Source: Wallemia ichthyophaga EXF-994 (taxonomy: Eukaryota; Fungi; Basidiomycota). From it: a stretch of DNA of 32,000 bases. Of this stretch, positions 22,669 to 29,247 are shown piece after piece. A program made the position numbers and the translations under genes. The notes below the pieces were generated by a model, which searched no databases, was not told the origin of the DNA, and saw only the letters and a program-made list of their open reading frames with translations. The stretch covers positions 360,001-392,000 of the forward strand of contig NW_008806276.1 in NCBI RefSeq assembly GCF_000400465.1, written 5' to 3'. Positions within the stretch are counted from its first letter, which is position 1, and the number at the start of each line of letters is the position of its first letter.

Positions 22669-23391
22669 TTAAGATCGAACGAGTGGCCGTGACTCGAGTT
22701 GAGTGAATGGTTTTGCGTGTGTCGAGTAAACGCTCTGCCTAATCGGCGTCGGTGGAGGAGAGGGATATGTGCCAGCAGGAGCACAGCCATGCTCCAGTTT
22801 TTGCCTCTTGAAAGAGACTGAAGCTGGCGTTGATGGCGGGGTGCGGTACAGAGTACTCTGGAACGATTCTAGATGGCTGCTGAGCGTCTCAATCTCGCCT
22901 TCACCCACTGTAACGTGATAGCCGAGGTGTGCAAATAGTTCTCTCTCCATCTGGTTGATCTCCTGGAGTGTAAACTGCCCTCTGGCCACGATATGCCACG
23001 AGCTATTGGCGAAGGTGTCGTCGTTGTTAACCTTGCTTGATATCATCAGCGCTGCGAGATACAGTCGCTGGCCAGCGCTCCCAGTGGCGTTGGGGAAGCG
23101 TCTCTTTAGCCTGTGCAACAGCACTAACGCAGATAAGCAGATATCGCCACTCAGCTGTGTCCGGTACATGGCGTACGCTATGAAATTGTCCAAGCTTGGT
23201 GCGTCCAGCGTAGTGGCGTGCAGTGGACAACTGAAGAGCGAGTAAAGGAATGCGGCAGACAAGCTTGCCAATGGATTCTGCTGTGGATTTGGTAGGCTGT
23301 TTAGCTGCGACTGCCTGAGATTGTAGCTGCGTGTGCGTGTGTACGTGTATGGTGTAGGTGGGGTCAGTGGTTGTGACATTGCCGTAACCAT
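22669..23391 (-). CDS. Pho85-type cyclin (PCL/Pho80 family); intronless
   Basis: FIAYAMYRTQL...SALVLLHRLKRRFP...RLYLAALMISSKVNNDDTFANSSW.IV...EINQMERE. The track start at 23421 is TTG; ATGs are at 23391 and 23379. Confidence 0.9.
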   Translation of the reverse strand: MVTAMSQPLTPPTPYTYTRTRSYNLRQSQLNSLPNPQQNPLASLSAAFLYSLFSCPLHATTLDAPSLDNFIAYAMYRTQLSGDICLSALVLLHRLKRRFPNATGSAGQRLYLAALMISSKVNNDDTFANSSWHIVARGQFTLQEINQMERELFAHLGYHVTVGEGEIETLSSHLESFQSTLYRTPPSTPASVSFKRQKLEHGCAPAGTYPSPPPTPIRQSVYSTHAKPFTQLESRPLVRS

Positions 23392-23642
23392 TTTTTGATC
23401 CAAGTCAACGCCTACTACCAAGATGTGATGCTGTCGCTAATTGCTTTGGGGTCTGAGGTACAACCGCGGCTCGATCAGTGCGTCTGAGATATAACTTTTA
23501 ACCGGTGTTTGACGGAACTAAACGGTGATTACTCAATTTATTCATGGAATAGCTCTTTTTATCCTCCCTCTGATCATTACCCTTGTAATTTAAATTGATA
23601 AAATTTTTGACAGCTCAGCGGGGCATTGCGAGTTTCTATTGC

Positions 23643-23749: not shown

Positions 23750-24331
23750 ATGGGCAACACACATTCAACCGACAGTATACTGCTCGACAATAAAATACAA
23801 AGGGATAAGCTAAATCATTTTAAGAAATCACTGGATAATTTAGCACAAGTAAATCACTCGCTAGCCGCAGAAGCAGTCGCCCGTTCTGACGTCACAGCGG
23901 CTCGCAAGTTTTTACAAATTAAATATGACAACATAGCGAGTGTGAGGCAGGTACAGGCGCAGCTGGATAGTCTGAGTGGAATAATAAAGGGAATTGAAGG
24001 CAAGCGTGAGGAGATGTTGTTGCTCGAGCAGTTGGAGCAGGGTAACCAGCTCCTGAGCAGACTGAACAAGACAATTAGATTGGAACGCGTACAAGACATA
24101 CTCAATTCCAAGGAAACACAAGAATCTTATCAGCAGGAGATATCTAATTTAATTTATACACCAATTCCAGACCTTCAACTGGATAATGAATTGGATAGCC
24201 TTGTTGATGAGGAACCAACACGACAGCTAAAATTACCACGGGTGCCAGAAGGGGAGGTTGGAGTGGATACAAACGAGCATAATGAGCACAATGAGCACAT
24301 CAAATCACCAGAACAACCCTTACCCGCTTAA
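23750..24331 (+). CDS. VPS20: ESCRT-III Snf7-family subunit, Vps20/CHMP6-like; intronless
   Basis: N-myristoylation start MGNTHS, DSILLDNKIQRDKL, helical core, MIM2-like LKLPRVP, C-terminus EQPLPA*. The sequence is divergent. Confidence 0.75.
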   Translation: MGNTHSTDSILLDNKIQRDKLNHFKKSLDNLAQVNHSLAAEAVARSDVTAARKFLQIKYDNIASVRQVQAQLDSLSGIIKGIEGKREEMLLLEQLEQGNQLLSRLNKTIRLERVQDILNSKETQESYQQEISNLIYTPIPDLQLDNELDSLVDEEPTRQLKLPRVPEGEVGVDTNEHNEHNEHIKSPEQPLPA

Positions 24332-26296
24332 TGGACTGCCAATTGATATCAGTCTACGTATCTGGCTCATGTATAATCAATTGCCCACAGAGACTCAGCA
24401 AATCGATAAATTCATTTTAAATTTCAGTGAGGCTTACTATGAGCACAACAAGCTCATCCCCCAAGACACTGTGTATATTCTCAGTTTCAGTATTCTTCTC
24501 CTCAATACAGATAAATTTAATAAGTCAAACAAACATAAAATGTCTAAACGTGACTTTATTAGGAATACCAACTATATTGGCATCTCTGAGTACTTTCTTG
24601 AGTATTTATACGACAACACTTGCTTTACCCCTTTCATTAAACTCGTTGATGCCACAAGATTGCCTTCAAATCACCCTTACAGCTACATTCTAAGCAACTC
24701 CCTCGATAGGCTTAGGTTACCCACTTTAAGCAAGCCAAACGACGCAAAATTTTCACTCTCAGACGCTTACTCCCTTTCAAAACTCAACAGTCTCTTCATT
24801 AACGCTCCTATAATACGCCTTTCTACTAATGAATTCCTTCGCCTCACTCATTACAGCAAACTGAGCATAAAGTTACCTAAAAACACTCTTTGGCGGAGTT
24901 TCGTGGTTATTTTAACAGGTTCACAGTTGCTGCTATACAAAAACATGAGTGTGCTTGCTTCTATAAGAAGTGAAATTGTTAAATTCAATGGCCTTGTTAA
25001 GGAGCACTTGACCAGTTCAAATAACACCCACGCTTCACTCAACCTCCGCAACCTTGATACTCCTTCCCAATACTCTTTTAAACCTGACGATATCATTCCG
25101 CTCGATGACTCTGTAGCTCTTGTAGACCACAGCTACTCTAAACACCCCAATACCATCACTCTCCATTCCCGCAAGTGTAAATACCTCCTTCAGACGCACT
25201 CTATCGAGAGCATGCATTTGTGGATTAGTTTGATCAACTACTCGGCGGCTTTTAAGTGGGCTAATGTCCGCATTCGCGGTCATTCTCTGTCTGATAGCCA
25301 TCTTCATTATGCTGGATTAAAAGCGCGGTCGAGATTACATAGCAGTGCTAGTACATCAGAATTTGCGAGAGCATCTACAGCTACGTCTACATCCGCATCT
25401 ACACCCACATCCACACCTACACCCACTTCATCTCAATCTTCACCCCAATCGCCCACCTCACCGACACTGAACCGCGTTGGCGATTTTGACTCGGCAGTCG
25501 ACTCGATTAGTGCGCACATGCACGCGTCTTCGAATGCTCACTCTCGCTCGAGCAAGCTAAAAGTGGGTATTAACAAAGCTGGAGAAGGCGGGCTAACAAG
25601 ATGCTGCAGACCAAGTTGGCGCACCTGACGCGGTTACAGGAGGAGAACAGCGCGCATTTGAGTGATACGCTCAATAAACTAGAGCTTTGTGGTACGCTGA
25701 CGCCCTTCCGTCGCTCGACGCGTAGCCGGCTGAACGGGGAGCTGGTAGCGATGCTCACGGGGGCACTGGCAGAGCTGCGCGTCGCCGAGGCTAAGTATGC
25801 TTCTGTCGCAGCTACCCTCGCGGGAGATCTGGCTGTCGAAGAGAAAATAGAAGCGAGGTCGGTTAGCGTTGGTATGCGCGCTGCGGCTGTACACTCCCAG
25901 GCTAGTAGAGTGCGTAGAGCTCAGAGTATGTTTGTAGGCGAGGGTGTGGGTGATGTAGGCGGGGAAGTTGGGAATTTGGAAGGTGTGCAAGCTACAGATC
26001 ACACCACTGACCATTCACCTAATCACTCACCTGACGCCCTCCAACACACCGCCTCCATTCGCTCTAATCGCACTCAGAAATACTCCTCCGCTACGAGCCT
26101 CGCGCTACAGGAACAAGACAACGAAGAGTATCCATCGAATAGCACCAGTACCACGGCCACCTCTTCAAATAACCACTACGGCCATATTTCAGTCATCAAG
26201 ATGCCAGACGCGGTGCGCAAACACGCGCGTAACTGGAGCCAAGGAGGAAGCACGAGCAAAGAGATAGTATCGCCGACGACGCAAAAGACTGAGTAG
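24282..26296 (+). CDS. Sec7 + PH domain Arf guanine nucleotide exchange factor (Syt1/Yel1-like)
   Basis: LPIDISLR..LPTETQQIDK (Glu finger), YILSFSILLLNTDKFN, HKMSKRDFIRNT; PH segments WRSFVVILTGSQLLLYK and MHLWISLINY. Intron 25563-25609 joins to ORF 25601..26296. The start is uncertain and overlaps VPS20. Confidence 0.85.
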
Positions 26297-26381
26297 AATT
26301 TATAGGACGAGTAAATATTTATTTGTTGTGTCATCAGTTGTGTTATCAATGTCATCATCTTGAACCACCACCACCAACACC

Positions 26382-27848
26382 ATGAGAGATCACCGCGATG
26401 ACCCGCACTACACTCCCACACCGGGTAGCTCACAGCCTCCGACACAGGCACACTCGGATAGCCTTATTATCCCGCGTACCCCAGTCACCTCTCTCTCCTC
26501 GCAGATAGTCCTCAGTGAGGAAGCGTATACGGCTGCACTCAGTGCGATCATCAAACGCGATTTCTTCCCGCATTTGAAGGCTGCAGATGAATTGAGCGCG
26601 AGTGTGAACAATTGGCGTGGTGGTGGTACTCCCGCCACAACCACTGCTGCTACTCCCACTCCCGCCAATGCCCCCCACTCTTACTCCTTCGCCTCCCTCT
26701 CCTTATCTGAATTCCAGTCGCGGTTCACCTCGGAAGACAACGCCAGCTTCAGCTACCAGCTGCACAAGGCGAACAAGCGGCGGCGAGAGGTGTATCGCTG
26801 GGCATACGATGCAGAGCAACTAGCGAATGAGCGCATCCAGCTTGCCAATGCGGGTATGAACGAGCGCATTGAGGGTGTGCACAACCCCATGGACGACGGC
26901 GAACGGAAGCTTCTGGCAGCCACAGAAGGCAAACTTCATACCACCACTTCTCAAATCTCTCAACACGCCGGCGAGGGCAATTCACAAGCACTCGTGCGGC
27001 GCGAAAAGCAGTCGATGCGCGAGCTCGAGTTGGGTGTTGAAAAGCGATCCACGGAGCACGGTCTAATTCCAACTTGTACCTCACAGCAAGACAACAGAAG
27101 CGCAGCCGTTACCGCTTGGCCCCTCACCGCCGCTAATAATCTCATGTTCCAACCTGATGCGACAACACCTAATTTTGGCTATCGTGGCCACTTTGCCACT
27201 CGTCATCGAGAGGCGGAGAATCGCGCTAAGCGCGTTACTAACTATCCGGCAACTCATCTTTCCGGTGCTCATAGTGACGGTGTCGGTGATGGCGAAAGCA
27301 GTGCGACTGGTAGCGTAGACACCAATGCTATCAACGCTGCTGTTAATGCTGGTGCTGATAGTGGTGCAAGCACACCCACTCACACTCTCCCTTCCGTGCG
27401 CGGTTATACCTTTGTCGAAAGCTCATCACAACCAGAACCAGAACCTCAAAAGCGGACTCGCGGACGTGTTGATAAGGAGGAAGAGACAGTGTGGGACAGT
27501 CGTGCGTATCTACTACTCGCGCTCTTACTCACCAACTCACCACTCACTTATCCTCCAGCTGGCGACTTCAAGATACCGCGGCTGAGTAGACGTGACAGAC
27601 TGGGACAGCAGCTGGCGTCGCAGGCGCAAAACAAGGCAAAAGGTGGAACAAGTGGAGCAGGTGTCACTCCCAACACTCCCGCGAAAACACCCCGATCCGT
27701 TGCTCTCAGTCCGGCCGGTCACGCTCTCCTGCAGAAAACTAAAAGCAGGCGAGACAATGGCGCGACGGATGCTCCAATCAGATCTCGCATCAACCAGTCC
27801 CCGGACATTCGCAGGAAAGACAGACCTTGGACTCCTACACCTAAGTAG
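26382..27848 (+). CDS. ESS2: Splicing factor Ess2/DGCR14 (nuclear protein Es2, Bis1)
   Basis: VLSEEAYTAALSAIIKRDFFPHL, LSLSEFQSRFTSEDNASF, NNLMFQPD, VRGYTFV, FKIP..SRRD.LG..LA, LSPAGHALL. A probable 57-nt intron lies at 27502-27558. Confidence 0.9.
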   Translation: MRDHRDDPHYTPTPGSSQPPTQAHSDSLIIPRTPVTSLSSQIVLSEEAYTAALSAIIKRDFFPHLKAADELSASVNNWRGGGTPATTTAATPTPANAPHSYSFASLSLSEFQSRFTSEDNASFSYQLHKANKRRREVYRWAYDAEQLANERIQLANAGMNERIEGVHNPMDDGERKLLAATEGKLHTTTSQISQHAGEGNSQALVRREKQSMRELELGVEKRSTEHGLIPTCTSQQDNRSAAVTAWPLTAANNLMFQPDATTPNFGYRGHFATRHREAENRAKRVTNYPATHLSGAHSDGVGDGESSATGSVDTNAINAAVNAGADSGASTPTHTLPSVRGYTFVESSSQPEPEPQKRTRGRVDKEEETVWDSRAYLLLALLLTNSPLTYPPAGDFKIPRLSRRDRLGQQLASQAQNKAKGGTSGAGVTPNTPAKTPRSVALSPAGHALLQKTKSRRDNGATDAPIRSRINQSPDIRRKDRPWTPTPK

Positions 27849-27913: not shown

Positions 27914-29247
27914 TTACGTGCGACGTTGGTAAATTTGACCAAATTGACCAGCCGTGGAAGCAAGCGGGGATCTTTTCAGCTGCGCCAGGCTCCTTGCAGC
28001 TTCTAAGAGTTGTTCGATTGCCGTATCGGAAATTTGATGGTGTACTACGATCCTGTTAGATCCGATAACAATATCAGCATGGCTGTTGACGTGCTGAATA
28101 AACTCTTCGAGCGTCACTCCAATGGAGGTGCAGTCGAAAAAGACCATGGATGATTCCACCGGCGACAATATCCTAATACCGAGTTCTTCGAAACCCTTGG
28201 CTAGGGTCTGGGCTTGTGAGTGTGTCTTCTTAATGAGGGGGAGGTGTTTATCAATGGCAAAGTCGGCACATTCGACCATGAATCCTGACTGACGAATACC
28301 GCCTCCGAACAGCTTCTTGAACCATCTAGCTTTGGCAATGAATTTCTCGCTGCCGACGAGGATGGACCCGATGGGTGCGCCGACACCTTTACTCAAACAC
28401 AAACTGACGCTGTGGAAAGGATCGCAGAGCTGTTTGATGGATAGGCCAGTAGCCGCATGCACTGGGCGGGAGGTTAGACTGAGTGATTGTGCGTACATGC
28501 AAACGCAAACGTACCGTTCCAAAGACGCGCGCCATCGAGATGCATAATGAGACCTTGTCTAGTAGCCCAATCGCTTATGCGCACCATCTCCGACTGAGGG
28601 AAAACGAGGCCATTCTTTGTATTTTCAAGACTAACAACGCGCGTAGGAGCAGAGCAGAGATCCTCATCTAGCACAGCATGGCTCTGTACATCTTGCAGAG
28701 TGAGATGGTGTGTATTCACCGGCTCGACGGGAGTTATCTGGGCCTGGGAGTGGAATGCTACACCACCCGTCTCGTATTTGTAAATATGAGCGTGGGCATC
28801 GCACAAAACGCTGTGTGGCGGCTGCGTTAGGTGGGTGCGCAAACCGACCTGGTTGGACATTGTACCCGATACGCAGAACATAGCAGCTTGTTTTCCAGTC
28901 ATACGAGCTATTTTGTGTTCGAACTTCTGCGTGCTCTCGTCTTCCTGTGTTCGTGTTAGTTGTATAGTGCGTGCGTTTCGCAATGCACTCACGCCGTATA
29001 CATCGTCACCACGCGACGCATGTGCTAATGCATAGGCGAGCATCTCATCAGTCTTTGTGCGCTGTTAGCCTGCTTATCCTGCGTGTACTGCTGCTTATTC
29101 ACCGGAGCTGTTATCGTATCCGCTGTACTCCCGTTCAGCCTCGAAACAACCACAACCAAAATACTCACTCCTGAAATCACGCGATAAGGATTCTAGTTTA
29201 CGTGCGTGCGTTGAAAAGTTTCGTAGATTACCCAATCCAATTCTCAT
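27914..29247 (-). CDS. GLY1: Low-specificity L-threonine aldolase, about 5 exons
   Basis: Spliced RDFR|TDTITAP|TDEML...RGDDVYG|ED...SGTMSNQVGLRTHL..PPHSVLCD..AHIY.YETGG, LENTKNG, HLDGARLWN, SLCLSKGVGAPIGS (PLP Lys). First ATG at 29247. Confidence 0.95.

What the first reader, a model, noticed from the sequence alone, without database searches (positions are those of the whole stretch)
23750..26296. VPS20 and a Sec7-PH Arf-GEF overlap on the same strand; one splice would fuse them in frame
Seen: VPS20 ends at 24331 with a natural-looking C-terminus, but the Sec7 frame is already open. Its only ATGs upstream of the conserved LPIDISLR helix are 24282 and 24291, inside VPS20, giving a 50-nt dual-coding overlap. 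They arise from a 9-bp repeat read as HNEHNEH in VPS20 and MSTMST in Sec7. The next in-frame Met (24369) would truncate the Sec7 core. No intergenic promoter exists, and the GEF lacks the long N-terminus typical of Syt1-like proteins. A CAG acceptor at 24311 is phase 0 in the Sec7 frame, and three weak GT sites (24242, 24257, 24263) are phase 0 in the VPS20 frame. Introns of 70, 55 or 49 nt would delete the stop and give a myristoylated ESCRT-III-Sec7-PH chimera. Inference: an internal promoter, a bicistronic mRNA, or an alternatively spliced fusion coupling Arf activation to ESCRT-III membranes. I know of no described example of the fusion.
Basis: partly seen in the sequence, partly recalled or inferred. 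Interest (0 to 1): 0.72.

Follow-up and report, generated by a model that had tools for sequence, protein, structure and literature searches.

The report
Overlapping VPS20 and half-Sec7 GEF genes
In the salt-loving fungus Wallemia ichthyophaga, a shortened Arf-activator gene starts 50 bases inside the end of the VPS20 gene; the single fused protein listed in GenBank is most likely a gene-prediction error, not a real chimera.

Summary
The window is Wallemia ichthyophaga. VPS20 (23750-24331) overlaps by 50 nt a Sec7-PH gene (24282-25562, 47-nt intron 25563-25609, 25610-26296). That gene has only the C-terminal half of a Sec7 domain.

The proposed fusion is not undescribed. Exons 23750-24256 + 24312-25562 + 25610-26296 translate exactly to GenBank EOR03695.1/XP_009266731.1 (814 aa, junction ..PEGE|NNPYPL). 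That model came from GeneMark-ES alone; RNA-seq was not used to build it.

Comparison with W. mellicola, a third Wallemia and an AT-rich relative from metagenomes favours two separate genes:
- The gene order, the +1 frame offset and at least one in-frame ATG in the last 47-62 nt of VPS20 are present in all six genomes; the first such ATG has A at -3 in the four lineages checked.
- The codons between the VPS20 stop and Met 24369 change mostly at synonymous sites.
- The distant relative has no Met at the 24369 position.
- The 55-nt "intron" has an off-consensus donor (GTTGGA) and no branch site, and its donor is absent in W. mellicola.

Full-length basidiomycete orthologues (1265-1384 aa) are not next to VPS20, so the gene was truncated and moved in the Wallemia lineage.

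No transcript data could be reached, so a minor fused isoform is not excluded.

The parts
23750..24331 (+). VPS20/CHMP6-like ESCRT-III gene, single exon, 193 aa, natural stop TAA at 24329-24331
   Evidence: ORF. Pfam Snf7 1.4e-12. A profile of four orthologues hits yeast Snf7 structures at E=9.5e-11 and, weakly, the Vps20 N-terminal peptide of 3HTU at E=0.11. M1-G2 is invariant in four lineages.
24233..24247 (+). LPRVP proline motif near the VPS20 C-terminus (MIM2-like). The GenBank fusion junction (after codon 24254-24256) lies three codons downstream of it.
   Evidence: The two prolines are invariant in four lineages: LPRVP / FPSEP / LPNEP / LPNIP. The link to the CHMP6 MIM2 motif is from memory and was not tested.
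24272..24298 (+). 9-bp tandem repeat (AACGAGCAT, AATGAGCAC, AATGAGCAC). Copies 2 and 3 create the two Sec7-frame ATGs.
   Evidence: Read directly. Identical in another W. ichthyophaga strain contig, L003.
24282..24331 (+). 50-nt same-strand dual-coding overlap: VPS20 tail NEHNEHIKSPEQPLPA* and Sec7-PH N-terminus MSTMSTSNHQNNPYPLN
   Evidence: The equivalent overlap is 50 nt in L002 and W. mellicola, 62 nt in L004 and 47 nt in L008/L009.
24282..25562 (+). Sec7-PH gene, exon 1 (427 codons), most likely starting at ATG 24282 (alternative 24291)
   Evidence: ATG with A at -3. The JGI W. mellicola model EIM21428.1 starts at the equivalent ATG. Codons 24336-24368 change mostly synonymously between species.
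24327..24617 (+). C-terminal half of a Sec7 domain (about helices F-J). It keeps the catalytic Glu in LPTETQQID and the LLNTD motif. Helices A-E are absent.
   Evidence: Pfam Sec7 2.8e-22 covers only profile positions 75-177 of 183. PDB Sec7 domains align from their residue ~81-93 onwards. The AlphaFold model has five helices at residues 21-115; Foldseek against ARNO/Sec7p gives rmsd 1.4-2.5 A over ~111 columns with TM ~0.5 of the target.
24870..25250 (+). PH domain (PH_9 type)
   Evidence: Pfam PH_9 1.3e-06 and PH 1.4e-05. The model has a beta-sandwich plus C-terminal helix with pLDDT >90. The best Foldseek matches are Sec7-PH tandems Grp1 and BRAG2.
25563..25609 (+). Genuine 47-nt intron, phase 0 (GTGGGT..CTAAC..CAG)
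   Evidence: It joins the two ORFs into a protein colinear with W. mellicola P0003/P0014. The position and signals are conserved in W. mellicola (GTAGGT..CTAAT..CAG, 46 nt) and L002 (GTGTGT..CTAAC..CAG, 45 nt). L004 has no intron here.
25610..26296 (+). Sec7-PH gene, exon 2 (228 codons + stop). Carries the conserved LTPFRRSTRSRL region and the C-terminal NYGHISVIKMPDAVRKHARNWSQGG motif.
24257..24311 (+). 55-nt segment treated as an intron in GenBank model EOR03695.1; judged here not to be a genuine intron
   Evidence: Splicing it out reproduces P0007 exactly. The donor GTTGGA has T at +3 and A at +6, seen in 0 of 12 supported introns of this window. There is no CTRAY branch site and the interior is 64% purine, within the 34-68% range of the nine supported introns measured. 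The donor is absent in W. mellicola (TTAAAG).

Best explanation
There are two separate genes whose coding regions overlap on the same strand.

VPS20 is translated to its own stop at 24331. The downstream gene encodes a 655-aa protein that begins at ATG 24282 (or 24291), inside the last 50 nt of VPS20. It continues through half of a Sec7 domain, a PH domain, one 47-nt intron and a conserved C-terminal region.

This gene is the Wallemia orthologue of a 1265-1384-aa basidiomycete Sec7-PH Arf-GEF of the EFA6/Syt1/Yel1 type. In the common ancestor of Wallemia and an AT-rich relative, a rearrangement removed the first ~500-650 codons, including Sec7 helices A-E. The remainder ended up directly behind VPS20. 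Expression was then kept by a start codon, and by inference a transcription start, inside the VPS20 3' coding end.

The 814-aa GenBank fusion is a merge made by an ab initio gene finder. Such a finder cannot place two overlapping same-strand genes.

Shown: the ORFs, the overlap, its conservation, the half-domain, the orthology and the origin of the GenBank model. Inferred: the internal transcription start, use of the first ATG, and whether the half-Sec7 protein still acts as a GEF.
For: 1. Gene order cyclin(-)/Snf7(+)/Sec7-PH(+)/Es2(+) is kept in W. mellicola, a third Wallemia (L002) and a distant AT-rich relative (L004).
2. In all six genomes the Sec7 frame is +1 relative to VPS20 and holds at least one ATG in the last 47-62 nt of VPS20. 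The first such ATG has A at -3 in 4 of 4 lineages, and the frame opens only 2-17 codons upstream of it.
3. Codons 24336-24368 (LPIDISLRIWL), between the VPS20 stop and Met 24369, differ from L002 at 5 synonymous and 1 nonsynonymous codon, and from W. mellicola at 4 and 3. The other two frames contain stops. This stretch is therefore translated and needs an upstream start.
4. L004 has Phe at the Met-24369 position.
5. The JGI W. mellicola model EIM21428.1 (642 aa) starts at the overlapping ATG. The NCBI W. mellicola models keep Snf7 and Sec7 as separate genes.
6. The W. ichthyophaga models came from GeneMark-ES 2.3e only (PMC3849046). Another database model, P0023, merges this gene with the downstream Es2 gene.
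7. Twelve introns of this window are supported by frame jumps against L005. All have G at +5, none has T at +3 or A at +6, and most have a CTRAY-like branch site. The real Sec7-PH intron keeps its position and signals in three species while its length drifts 47/46/45 nt. The fusion intron fails these criteria.
8. The AlphaFold model gives residues 1-11 pLDDT <50, as expected for a dispensable leader.
9. The N-terminal part of the orthologues has no match in the window or the related loci. The orthologues in two other basidiomycetes are not next to a Snf7 gene.
Against: - No transcript, 5'-end or peptide evidence could be reached, so the internal start is inferred.
- Same-strand CDS overlap is rare in eukaryotic nuclear genes.
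- The first overlap ATG is polymorphic in the L004 group (ATG in L004, ATA in L008/L009). No single ATG is strictly required.
- An ATG in 20-35 open codons is not very improbable by chance: roughly 0.3-0.45 per lineage, about 0.02 jointly if the lineages were independent (my estimate).
- W. ichthyophaga and L002 both have a GT and a CCAG|AAC spaced 55 nt apart at homologous positions.
- A Sec7 domain lacking helices A-E has no known working precedent, so some other mode of expression or function may be in play.
Confidence: 0.74

Rival explanations
1. The GenBank model is right. A 55-nt intron (24257-24311; alternatives 24263-24311 or 24242-24311) is spliced out, always or sometimes, and gives a myristoylated Vps20(1-169)-half-Sec7-PH chimera of 814 aa.
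For: - The spliced exons translate exactly to EOR03695.1.
- The length of 55 nt is typical: mean 61 nt in PMC3849046, 45-53 nt for the supported introns here.
- The donor has G at +5 and the acceptor is CAG.
- L002 has GT and CCAG|AAC at homologous positions, also 55 nt apart.
- There is no intergenic space for a promoter.
- Alternative splicing was reported for 15% of W. ichthyophaga genes.
Against: - The model is ab initio only.
- Donors are off-consensus: GTTGGA in W. ichthyophaga, GTAGTT in L002, GTAGAT in L004.
- W. mellicola has no GT at the site and only poor 115-193-nt alternatives.
- There is no CTRAY branch site, and the interior is 64% purine (within the 34-68% of the supported introns measured) with only 45% pyrimidine before the acceptor (0.35-0.80, most 0.55 or more, in those introns).
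- The 'intron' has equal length in two species, whereas the real intron drifts 47/46/45 nt.
- A conserved start ATG would not be needed.
- No Snf7+Sec7 architecture appears among homologues.
- The fusion would remove the VPS20 tail that runs to a natural stop in every genome. It would also leave the organism's probable only Vps20 carrying a 645-aa C-terminal extension: 7 Snf7-domain proteins in the proteome, which from memory is the usual fungal set.
Confidence: 0.1
2. The Sec7-PH protein starts at Met 24369 (MYNQLPTETQ), as in the NCBI W. mellicola models and ORF callers. There is then no coding overlap, and the upstream conservation is a relic or a 5'-UTR constraint.
For: - W. mellicola models TIC11375.1 and others, and P0002, start at the equivalent Met.
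- The Met is conserved in the three Wallemia species.
- This reading needs nothing unusual.
Against: - The 11 codons upstream change mostly at synonymous sites, and they align with a conserved Sec7 helix in the orthologues and in PDB structures.
- L004 has Phe at this position.
- The ATG context is weak (C at -3), against A at -3 for the overlap ATGs.
- AlphaFold places residues 21-31 in a confident helix packed in the domain.
Confidence: 0.06
3. One read-through or bicistronic VPS20-Sec7-PH mRNA serves both ORFs. The second ORF is reached by reinitiation, or by a +1 ribosomal frameshift at the VPS20 stop, which would also make a fusion.
For: - Polycistronic read-through transcripts are widespread in Agaricomycetes (PMC4503453).
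- The Sec7 frame is +1 in all genomes, and in W. ichthyophaga and W. mellicola the VPS20 stop lies only 4 nt before the conserved Sec7 motif.
Against: - The VPS20 ORF is 193 codons, and Sec7-frame ATGs at 24186 and 24207 precede 24282, which is unfavourable for leaky scanning or reinitiation.
- The sequences at the stop (GCT TAA T / CTT TAG T / GCC TGA G / TTT TAA G) share no slippery motif.
- In L002 the stop is 25 nt from the motif.
- A read-through transcript may still exist alongside a separate Sec7-PH mRNA. That would not contradict the main explanation.
Confidence: 0.05
4. The truncated Sec7-PH gene is a decaying remnant with no function.
For: Half of the catalytic domain is missing.
Against: - The ORF is intact in six genomes of four lineages.
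- Amino-acid identity between Wallemia species is 63-82% across the Sec7 half and the PH domain.
- The catalytic Glu and the LNTD motif are kept.
- The intron signals are maintained.
Confidence: 0.02

Closest known systems
GenBank EOR03695.1 / RefSeq XP_009266731.1, 'Protein transport protein sec73' of Wallemia ichthyophaga EXF-994 (814 aa)
   Same: It is this locus.
   Different: It is a GeneMark-ES ab initio model without transcript support. Comparative evidence here favours splitting it into a 193-aa Vps20 and a 655-aa Sec7-PH protein.
W. mellicola CBS 633.66 EIM21428.1 / XP_006958459.1 (642 aa, JGI) with the adjacent Snf7 gene
   Same: It is the orthologue. It has the same half-Sec7-PH layout, starts at an ATG 50 nt inside the VPS20 ORF, and has the same conserved intron.
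   Different: About 62-70% amino-acid identity. No GT at the position of the W. ichthyophaga fusion donor.
Full-length basidiomycete Sec7-PH GEFs (P0025 1384 aa, P0028 1265 aa, P0091 1376 aa); family of fungal Syt1/Yel1 and animal EFA6/PSD (family assignment partly from memory)
   Same: They share LPxETQQIDR, the SFS..L.TD.FNKSNK.KM(S/T)K motif, a PH_9-type PH domain, INY(A/S)(A/S)FK, LTPF(Q/R)(K/R)STR and a C-terminal conserved motif.
   Different: They carry a 512-645-aa N-terminal region and the complete Sec7 domain. They are not adjacent to VPS20.
Vps20 / CHMP6, the myristoylated ESCRT-III nucleator
   Same: Snf7-family fold, N-terminal Met-Gly, a proline motif near the C-terminus, ~190-230 aa.
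   Different: Its last 16 codons also encode the N-terminus of another protein in the +1 frame. Orthology to Vps20 rather than to another ESCRT-III paralogue was not tested by phylogeny.
Same-strand overlapping or read-through gene pairs in compact eukaryotic genomes, and polycistronic transcripts of Agaricomycetes (PMC4503453)
   Same: Tandem genes with no intergenic spacer in a 9.6-Mb genome that is 73.6% coding.
   Different: Here the coding sequences themselves overlap by 47-62 nt, and the overlap has persisted across deep divergence. [quoted passage not shown]

Membership tests
ESCRT-III Snf7 family | Snf7 domain across the helical core | tested here: met
   Pfam PF03357 E=1.4e-12, profile positions 9-170 of 171. 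The profile hits yeast Snf7 structures at E=9.5e-11.
Vps20/CHMP6 subfamily | N-terminal Met-Gly myristoylation signal | tested here: met
   MGN(T/S/K)xS and MGQYTS; M1 and G2 are invariant in four lineages. Myristoylation itself cannot be tested here.
Vps20/CHMP6 subfamily | Vps25-binding N-terminal helix; orthology rather than another ESCRT-III paralogue | tested here: inconclusive
   Only a weak match to the 39-residue Vps20 peptide of 3HTU (E=0.11). No phylogeny was done. The proteome has 7 Snf7-domain proteins, which fits one of each usual type.
Vps20/CHMP6 subfamily | C-terminal proline-rich MIM2-type motif | tested here: inconclusive
   (L/F)PxxP is conserved in four lineages. The MIM2 consensus is recalled from memory and binding cannot be tested.
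Sec7-domain Arf-GEF | Complete ~190-residue, ten-helix Sec7 domain | tested here: not met
   The Pfam match covers only profile positions 75-177 of 183. PDB domains align from residue ~81-93. Foldseek covers ~111 of ~190 residues with TM(target) ~0.5. No N-terminal half is found in the window or loci.
Sec7-domain Arf-GEF | Catalytic glutamate in motif 1, and motif 2 | tested here: met
   LPTETQQIDKF aligns with FRLPGEGQKIDRF, and SFSILLLNTD with SYSLIMLNTD of Sec7p 4OIY. E37, T76 and D77 are invariant in 50 sequences.
Sec7-domain Arf-GEF | Nucleotide-exchange activity on an Arf GTPase | not testable with these tools
   Needs a biochemical assay.
EFA6/Syt1/Yel1-type Sec7-PH GEF | Sec7 directly followed by a PH_9-type PH domain and a conserved C-terminal region | tested here: met
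   Pfam PH_9 at 29.0 bits against a cut-off of 28. The best fold matches are Sec7-PH tandems. LTPFRRSTR and the C-terminal motifs are shared with 1265-1384-aa orthologues.
EFA6/Syt1/Yel1-type Sec7-PH GEF | Long N-terminal region before the Sec7 domain | tested here: not met
   18 residues precede LPIDISLR, against 512-645 in the orthologues.
Spliceosomal intron (for 24257-24311) | GT-AG ends and typical length | tested here: met
   GT..CAG, 55 nt. The genome mean is 61 nt.
Spliceosomal intron (for 24257-24311) | Donor consensus GTRNGY and a CTRAY-like branch site near the 3' end, as in this genome's supported introns | tested here: not met
   GTTGGA has T at +3 and A at +6; both occur in 0 of 12 supported introns. 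There is no CTRAY.
Spliceosomal intron (for 24257-24311) | Splice sites conserved in relatives | tested here: not met
   W. mellicola has TTAAAG at the donor position. L002 has GTAGTT and L004 has GTAGAT at another position. The genuine intron 25563-25609 is conserved in three species.
Spliceosomal intron (for 24257-24311) | Junction reads in RNA | not testable with these tools
   No transcript-derived contigs or spliced products for this locus are in the collections searched.

The most novel reading that the evidence does not exclude
The half-Sec7-PH protein is a working Arf regulator that needs only the C-terminal Sec7 subdomain (helices F-J, with the Glu finger). Alternatively it is completed in trans by a separately encoded N-terminal half. 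On this reading, its fixed overlap with VPS20, kept since before Wallemia split from an AT-rich sister lineage, ties its expression to the ESCRT-III nucleator. This could work through shared read-through transcription or through a low-level spliced Vps20-GEF isoform, linking Arf activation to ESCRT-III membranes.
Probability: 0.1. Interest if true: 0.65.

Novelty: new variant of a known kind. Interest (0 to 1): 0.36.

Why it matters
1. The reference annotation of W. ichthyophaga probably carries a false chimera. As a result, Vps20 looks absent as a free protein, and "sec73" looks like an ESCRT-III-GEF fusion. Anyone counting ESCRT or Arf-GEF genes in this model halophile would be misled.

2. 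A same-strand coding overlap of 47-62 nt between two nuclear genes, kept across lineages that share only ~23-36% identity in these two proteins, is a clear example of what extreme genome compaction can fix in a fungus.

3. A Sec7 domain cut to its C-terminal half and still under purifying selection raises a testable question: can helices F-J plus a PH domain still bind or activate an Arf?

None of this opens a new class of system. If the fusion proved real it would be a new domain architecture, but the evidence is against it.

Tried and rejected
- Transcript evidence. The cluster members of the Sec7-PH proteins (Logan, ENA) are all unspliced genomic ORFs. L003 is identical genomic DNA. The supplements of PMC3849046 give only Pfam counts, no junction data.
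- Missing Sec7 N-terminal half. I looked in other frames of the VPS20 region and ran tblastn with orthologue N-termini against the window and all loci. Nothing was found. The rest of the genome could not be searched.
- Natural Snf7+Sec7 architectures. An exhaustive phmmer search with the 814-aa fusion and a profile search with four VPS20 orthologues found none apart from the GenBank model. Only the best stretch of each hit is listed, so this is not an absolute negative.
- +1 frameshifting at the VPS20 stop. The four stop contexts share no slippery motif, so this was rejected.
- Regex scan for consensus introns. It is too permissive: 28945-28992(-) matches but lies inside a continuous conserved exon. 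I replaced it with introns supported by cross-species frame jumps.
- The first VPS20 homology search returned only the query itself. A profile was needed.
- phmmer of VPS20 against the PDB found nothing. The profile found Snf7.
- Ancestral adjacency of VPS20 and the GEF. It is not seen in two other basidiomycetes.
Full report
**Identity of the window.** The Sec7-frame ORF matches a 5-member protein cluster at 100% identity. That cluster includes EOR03695.1/XP_009266731.1 of Wallemia ichthyophaga EXF-994. Splicing window exons 23750-24256, 24312-25562 and 25610-26296 reproduces that 814-aa protein residue for residue. The window is therefore W. ichthyophaga, a 9.6-Mb basidiomycete genome that is 73.6% coding, with introns averaging 61 nt (PMC3849046).

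**Check of the observation.** All details hold.
- VPS20 is an uninterrupted 193-codon ORF (23750-24331) with a Snf7 domain (E=1.4e-12) and an MG N-terminus.
- The Sec7 frame is open from 24231. Its only ATGs before LPIDISLR (24336) are at 24282 and 24291. Copies 2 and 3 of a 9-bp repeat create them. The overlap is 50 nt.
- The three GT sites and the CAG acceptor have the stated phases, and introns of 70, 55 or 49 nt give open fusions.
- The gene continues past the stop at 25628 through a 47-nt phase-0 intron (25563-25609, GTGGGT..CTAAC..CAG) into ORF 25601-26296.

**What the downstream gene is.**
- Pfam matches Sec7 only over profile positions 75-177 of 183, followed by a PH_9-type PH domain.
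- Solved Sec7 domains align from their residue ~81-93 onwards. The catalytic Glu (LPTETQQID against FRLPGEGQKID) and the LNTD motif are kept.
- An AlphaFold model built on a 50-sequence alignment has mean pLDDT 83. It shows a disordered leader (residues 1-11), five helices (21-115) and a PH domain.
- Foldseek superposes the helices on half of ARNO/Sec7p (rmsd 1.4-2.5 A over ~111 columns, TM ~0.5 of the target). The best overall matches are the Sec7-PH tandems Grp1 and BRAG2.
- An exhaustive phmmer search shows that the nearest proteins outside Wallemia are 1265-1384-aa basidiomycete Sec7-PH proteins. They have 512-645 residues before the equivalent LD(I/V)ALR, including the N-terminal half of the Sec7 domain. 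They share PH, LTPF(Q/R)(K/R)STR and C-terminal motifs with the Wallemia protein.
- That N-terminal part has no tblastn match in the window or in ~21 kb of related loci.
- In two other basidiomycetes the full-length gene is not next to a Snf7 gene.
- The Wallemia gene is therefore a 5'-truncated orthologue that was placed behind VPS20 within this lineage.

**The fusion is already a database model, but an unsupported one.** The genome paper states that genes were predicted with GeneMark-ES 2.3e. RNA-seq was used only afterwards, for expression and splicing surveys. From general knowledge, such a finder cannot emit two overlapping same-strand genes. When coding signal in the Sec7 frame reaches back into VPS20, a short intron is its only option. 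Merging recurs at this locus: another database model, P0023, joins the 3' part of this gene to the downstream Es2 gene. In W. mellicola the NCBI models keep Snf7 and Sec7 separate, and the JGI model EIM21428.1 (642 aa) starts at the ATG inside VPS20.

**Comparative test: the start codon.** Four lineages were compared:
- W. ichthyophaga;
- a Wallemia from SRR25399871 (L002/L005, 71% identity);
- W. mellicola (L001, 62%);
- an AT-rich Wallemia-like fungus from metagenomes (L004, 36%; variants L008-L011).

Gene order is the same in all. In every genome the Sec7 frame is +1 relative to VPS20 and carries at least one ATG in the last 47-62 nt of VPS20. The first such ATG has A at -3 in 4 of 4 lineages, whereas Met 24369 has C at -3. 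The Sec7 frame opens only 2-17 codons upstream of that ATG. ATGAGCA is shared by W. ichthyophaga, L002 and L004. Within the L004 group the first ATG is polymorphic (ATA in L008/L009), but a second ATG 15 nt downstream is invariant. A start is therefore always available, and the leader sequence itself is free to vary.

**Comparative test: the codons upstream of Met 24369.** The 11 codons between the VPS20 stop and Met 24369 differ from L002 at 5 synonymous and 1 nonsynonymous position. They differ from W. mellicola at 4 synonymous and 3 conservative positions. The other two frames hold stops. This stretch is translated in the Sec7 frame. A start at 24369 is therefore unlikely, and L004 has Phe at that position.

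**Comparative test: the intron.** Twelve introns of this window are supported by frame jumps against L005:
- They are about 45-53 nt long.
- All have G at +5, 11 of 12 have a purine at +3, and 10 of 12 have T at +6.
- Most have a CTRAY-like branch site 10-25 nt from a YAG acceptor.

The genuine Sec7-PH intron keeps its position and signals in three species while its sequence and length drift (47, 46 and 45 nt).

The fusion intron compares poorly:
- Its donor is GTTGGA, with T at +3 and A at +6; both occur in 0 of 12 supported introns.
- It has no CTRAY branch site, and its interior is 64% purine, which is within the 34-68% range of the nine supported introns measured.
- The homologous donor is GTAGTT in L002 and is absent in W. 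mellicola (TTAAAG). W. mellicola offers only 115-193-nt alternatives with poor donors. L004 offers GTAGAT at another position.
- The VPS20 tail up to its natural stop keeps a weak (S/E/I/Q)-P-(E/I) pattern in all lineages.
- No homologue with Snf7 plus Sec7 domains was found.

**Mechanism.**
- Shown: two ORFs overlapping by 50 nt, both conserved, the second encoding a half-Sec7-PH protein under purifying selection.
- Inferred: a transcription start for the second gene inside the VPS20 coding region. A start between 24208 and 24281 would make 24282 the first AUG. By the same inference, VPS20 polyadenylation falls inside the Sec7-PH coding region.
- Unknown: whether the half domain still catalyses exchange. 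All elements I recall as contacting Arf (helices F-H, the Glu finger) are present, but the structural N-terminal subdomain is not.
- A read-through transcript could coexist with this arrangement, as reported for Agaricomycetes (PMC4503453).
- A +1 frameshift at the VPS20 stop was considered and rejected, because the four stop contexts share no slippery motif.

**Verdict.** The overlap is real and old, and the internal-start reading is favoured (about 0.74). The spliced fusion (about 0.10) is an existing but probably wrong ab initio model. The interest lies in correcting the annotation, in a rare conserved same-strand CDS overlap, and in a half Sec7 domain that has been maintained. RNA junction and 5'-end data would settle the question quickly.

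Noticed in passing
window 23606-23618: The 13-mer TTTGACAGCTCAG lies ~130 nt upstream of the VPS20 ATG, in the divergent cyclin/VPS20 spacer. It is identical in W. mellicola (L001 3265-3277) and L002 (3196-3208) but absent from L004. It may be a promoter element.
   Followed up: partly
window ~25380-27848 (P0023): An 858-aa database model joins the 3' part of the Sec7-PH gene (..HISVIKMPDA) to the downstream Es2 gene (26382-27848). This is a second apparent mis-merge at this locus.
   Followed up: partly
L004 (ENA ERZ28597369 scaffold_871), L008-L011: An AT-rich fungus with Asn-rich proteins, found in several metagenomes, keeps the Wallemia gene order PPR/cyclin/VPS20/Sec7-PH/Es2/lyase/CobW. 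Identity is only 23-36% for VPS20 and Sec7-PH. Its Sec7-PH gene has no intron. The organism is unidentified.
   Followed up: partly
window 28945-28992 (- strand): A segment matches GTGAGT..CTAAC..CAG (48 nt) but lies inside a continuous, conserved exon of the beta-eliminating lyase gene. Consensus-like pseudo-introns do occur by chance in this genome.
   Followed up: yes
window 22999-23013 versus L001 2616-2678: The W. mellicola cyclin gene seems to have a ~48-nt intron where the W. ichthyophaga ORF (22669-23421, - strand) is continuous.
   Followed up: no
window 25380-25460: A Ser/Thr/Pro-rich low-complexity tract (STSASTPTSTPTPTSSQSSPQSPTSPT) differs between W. ichthyophaga strains by substitutions and by one extra repeat unit in P0023.
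   Followed up: no
window 24100-24300: All four ATG triplets in this stretch (24186, 24207, 24282, 24291) are in the Sec7 frame. The one at 24207 opens a 7-codon mini-ORF that ends at the stop just before the Sec7 frame opens.
   Followed up: no
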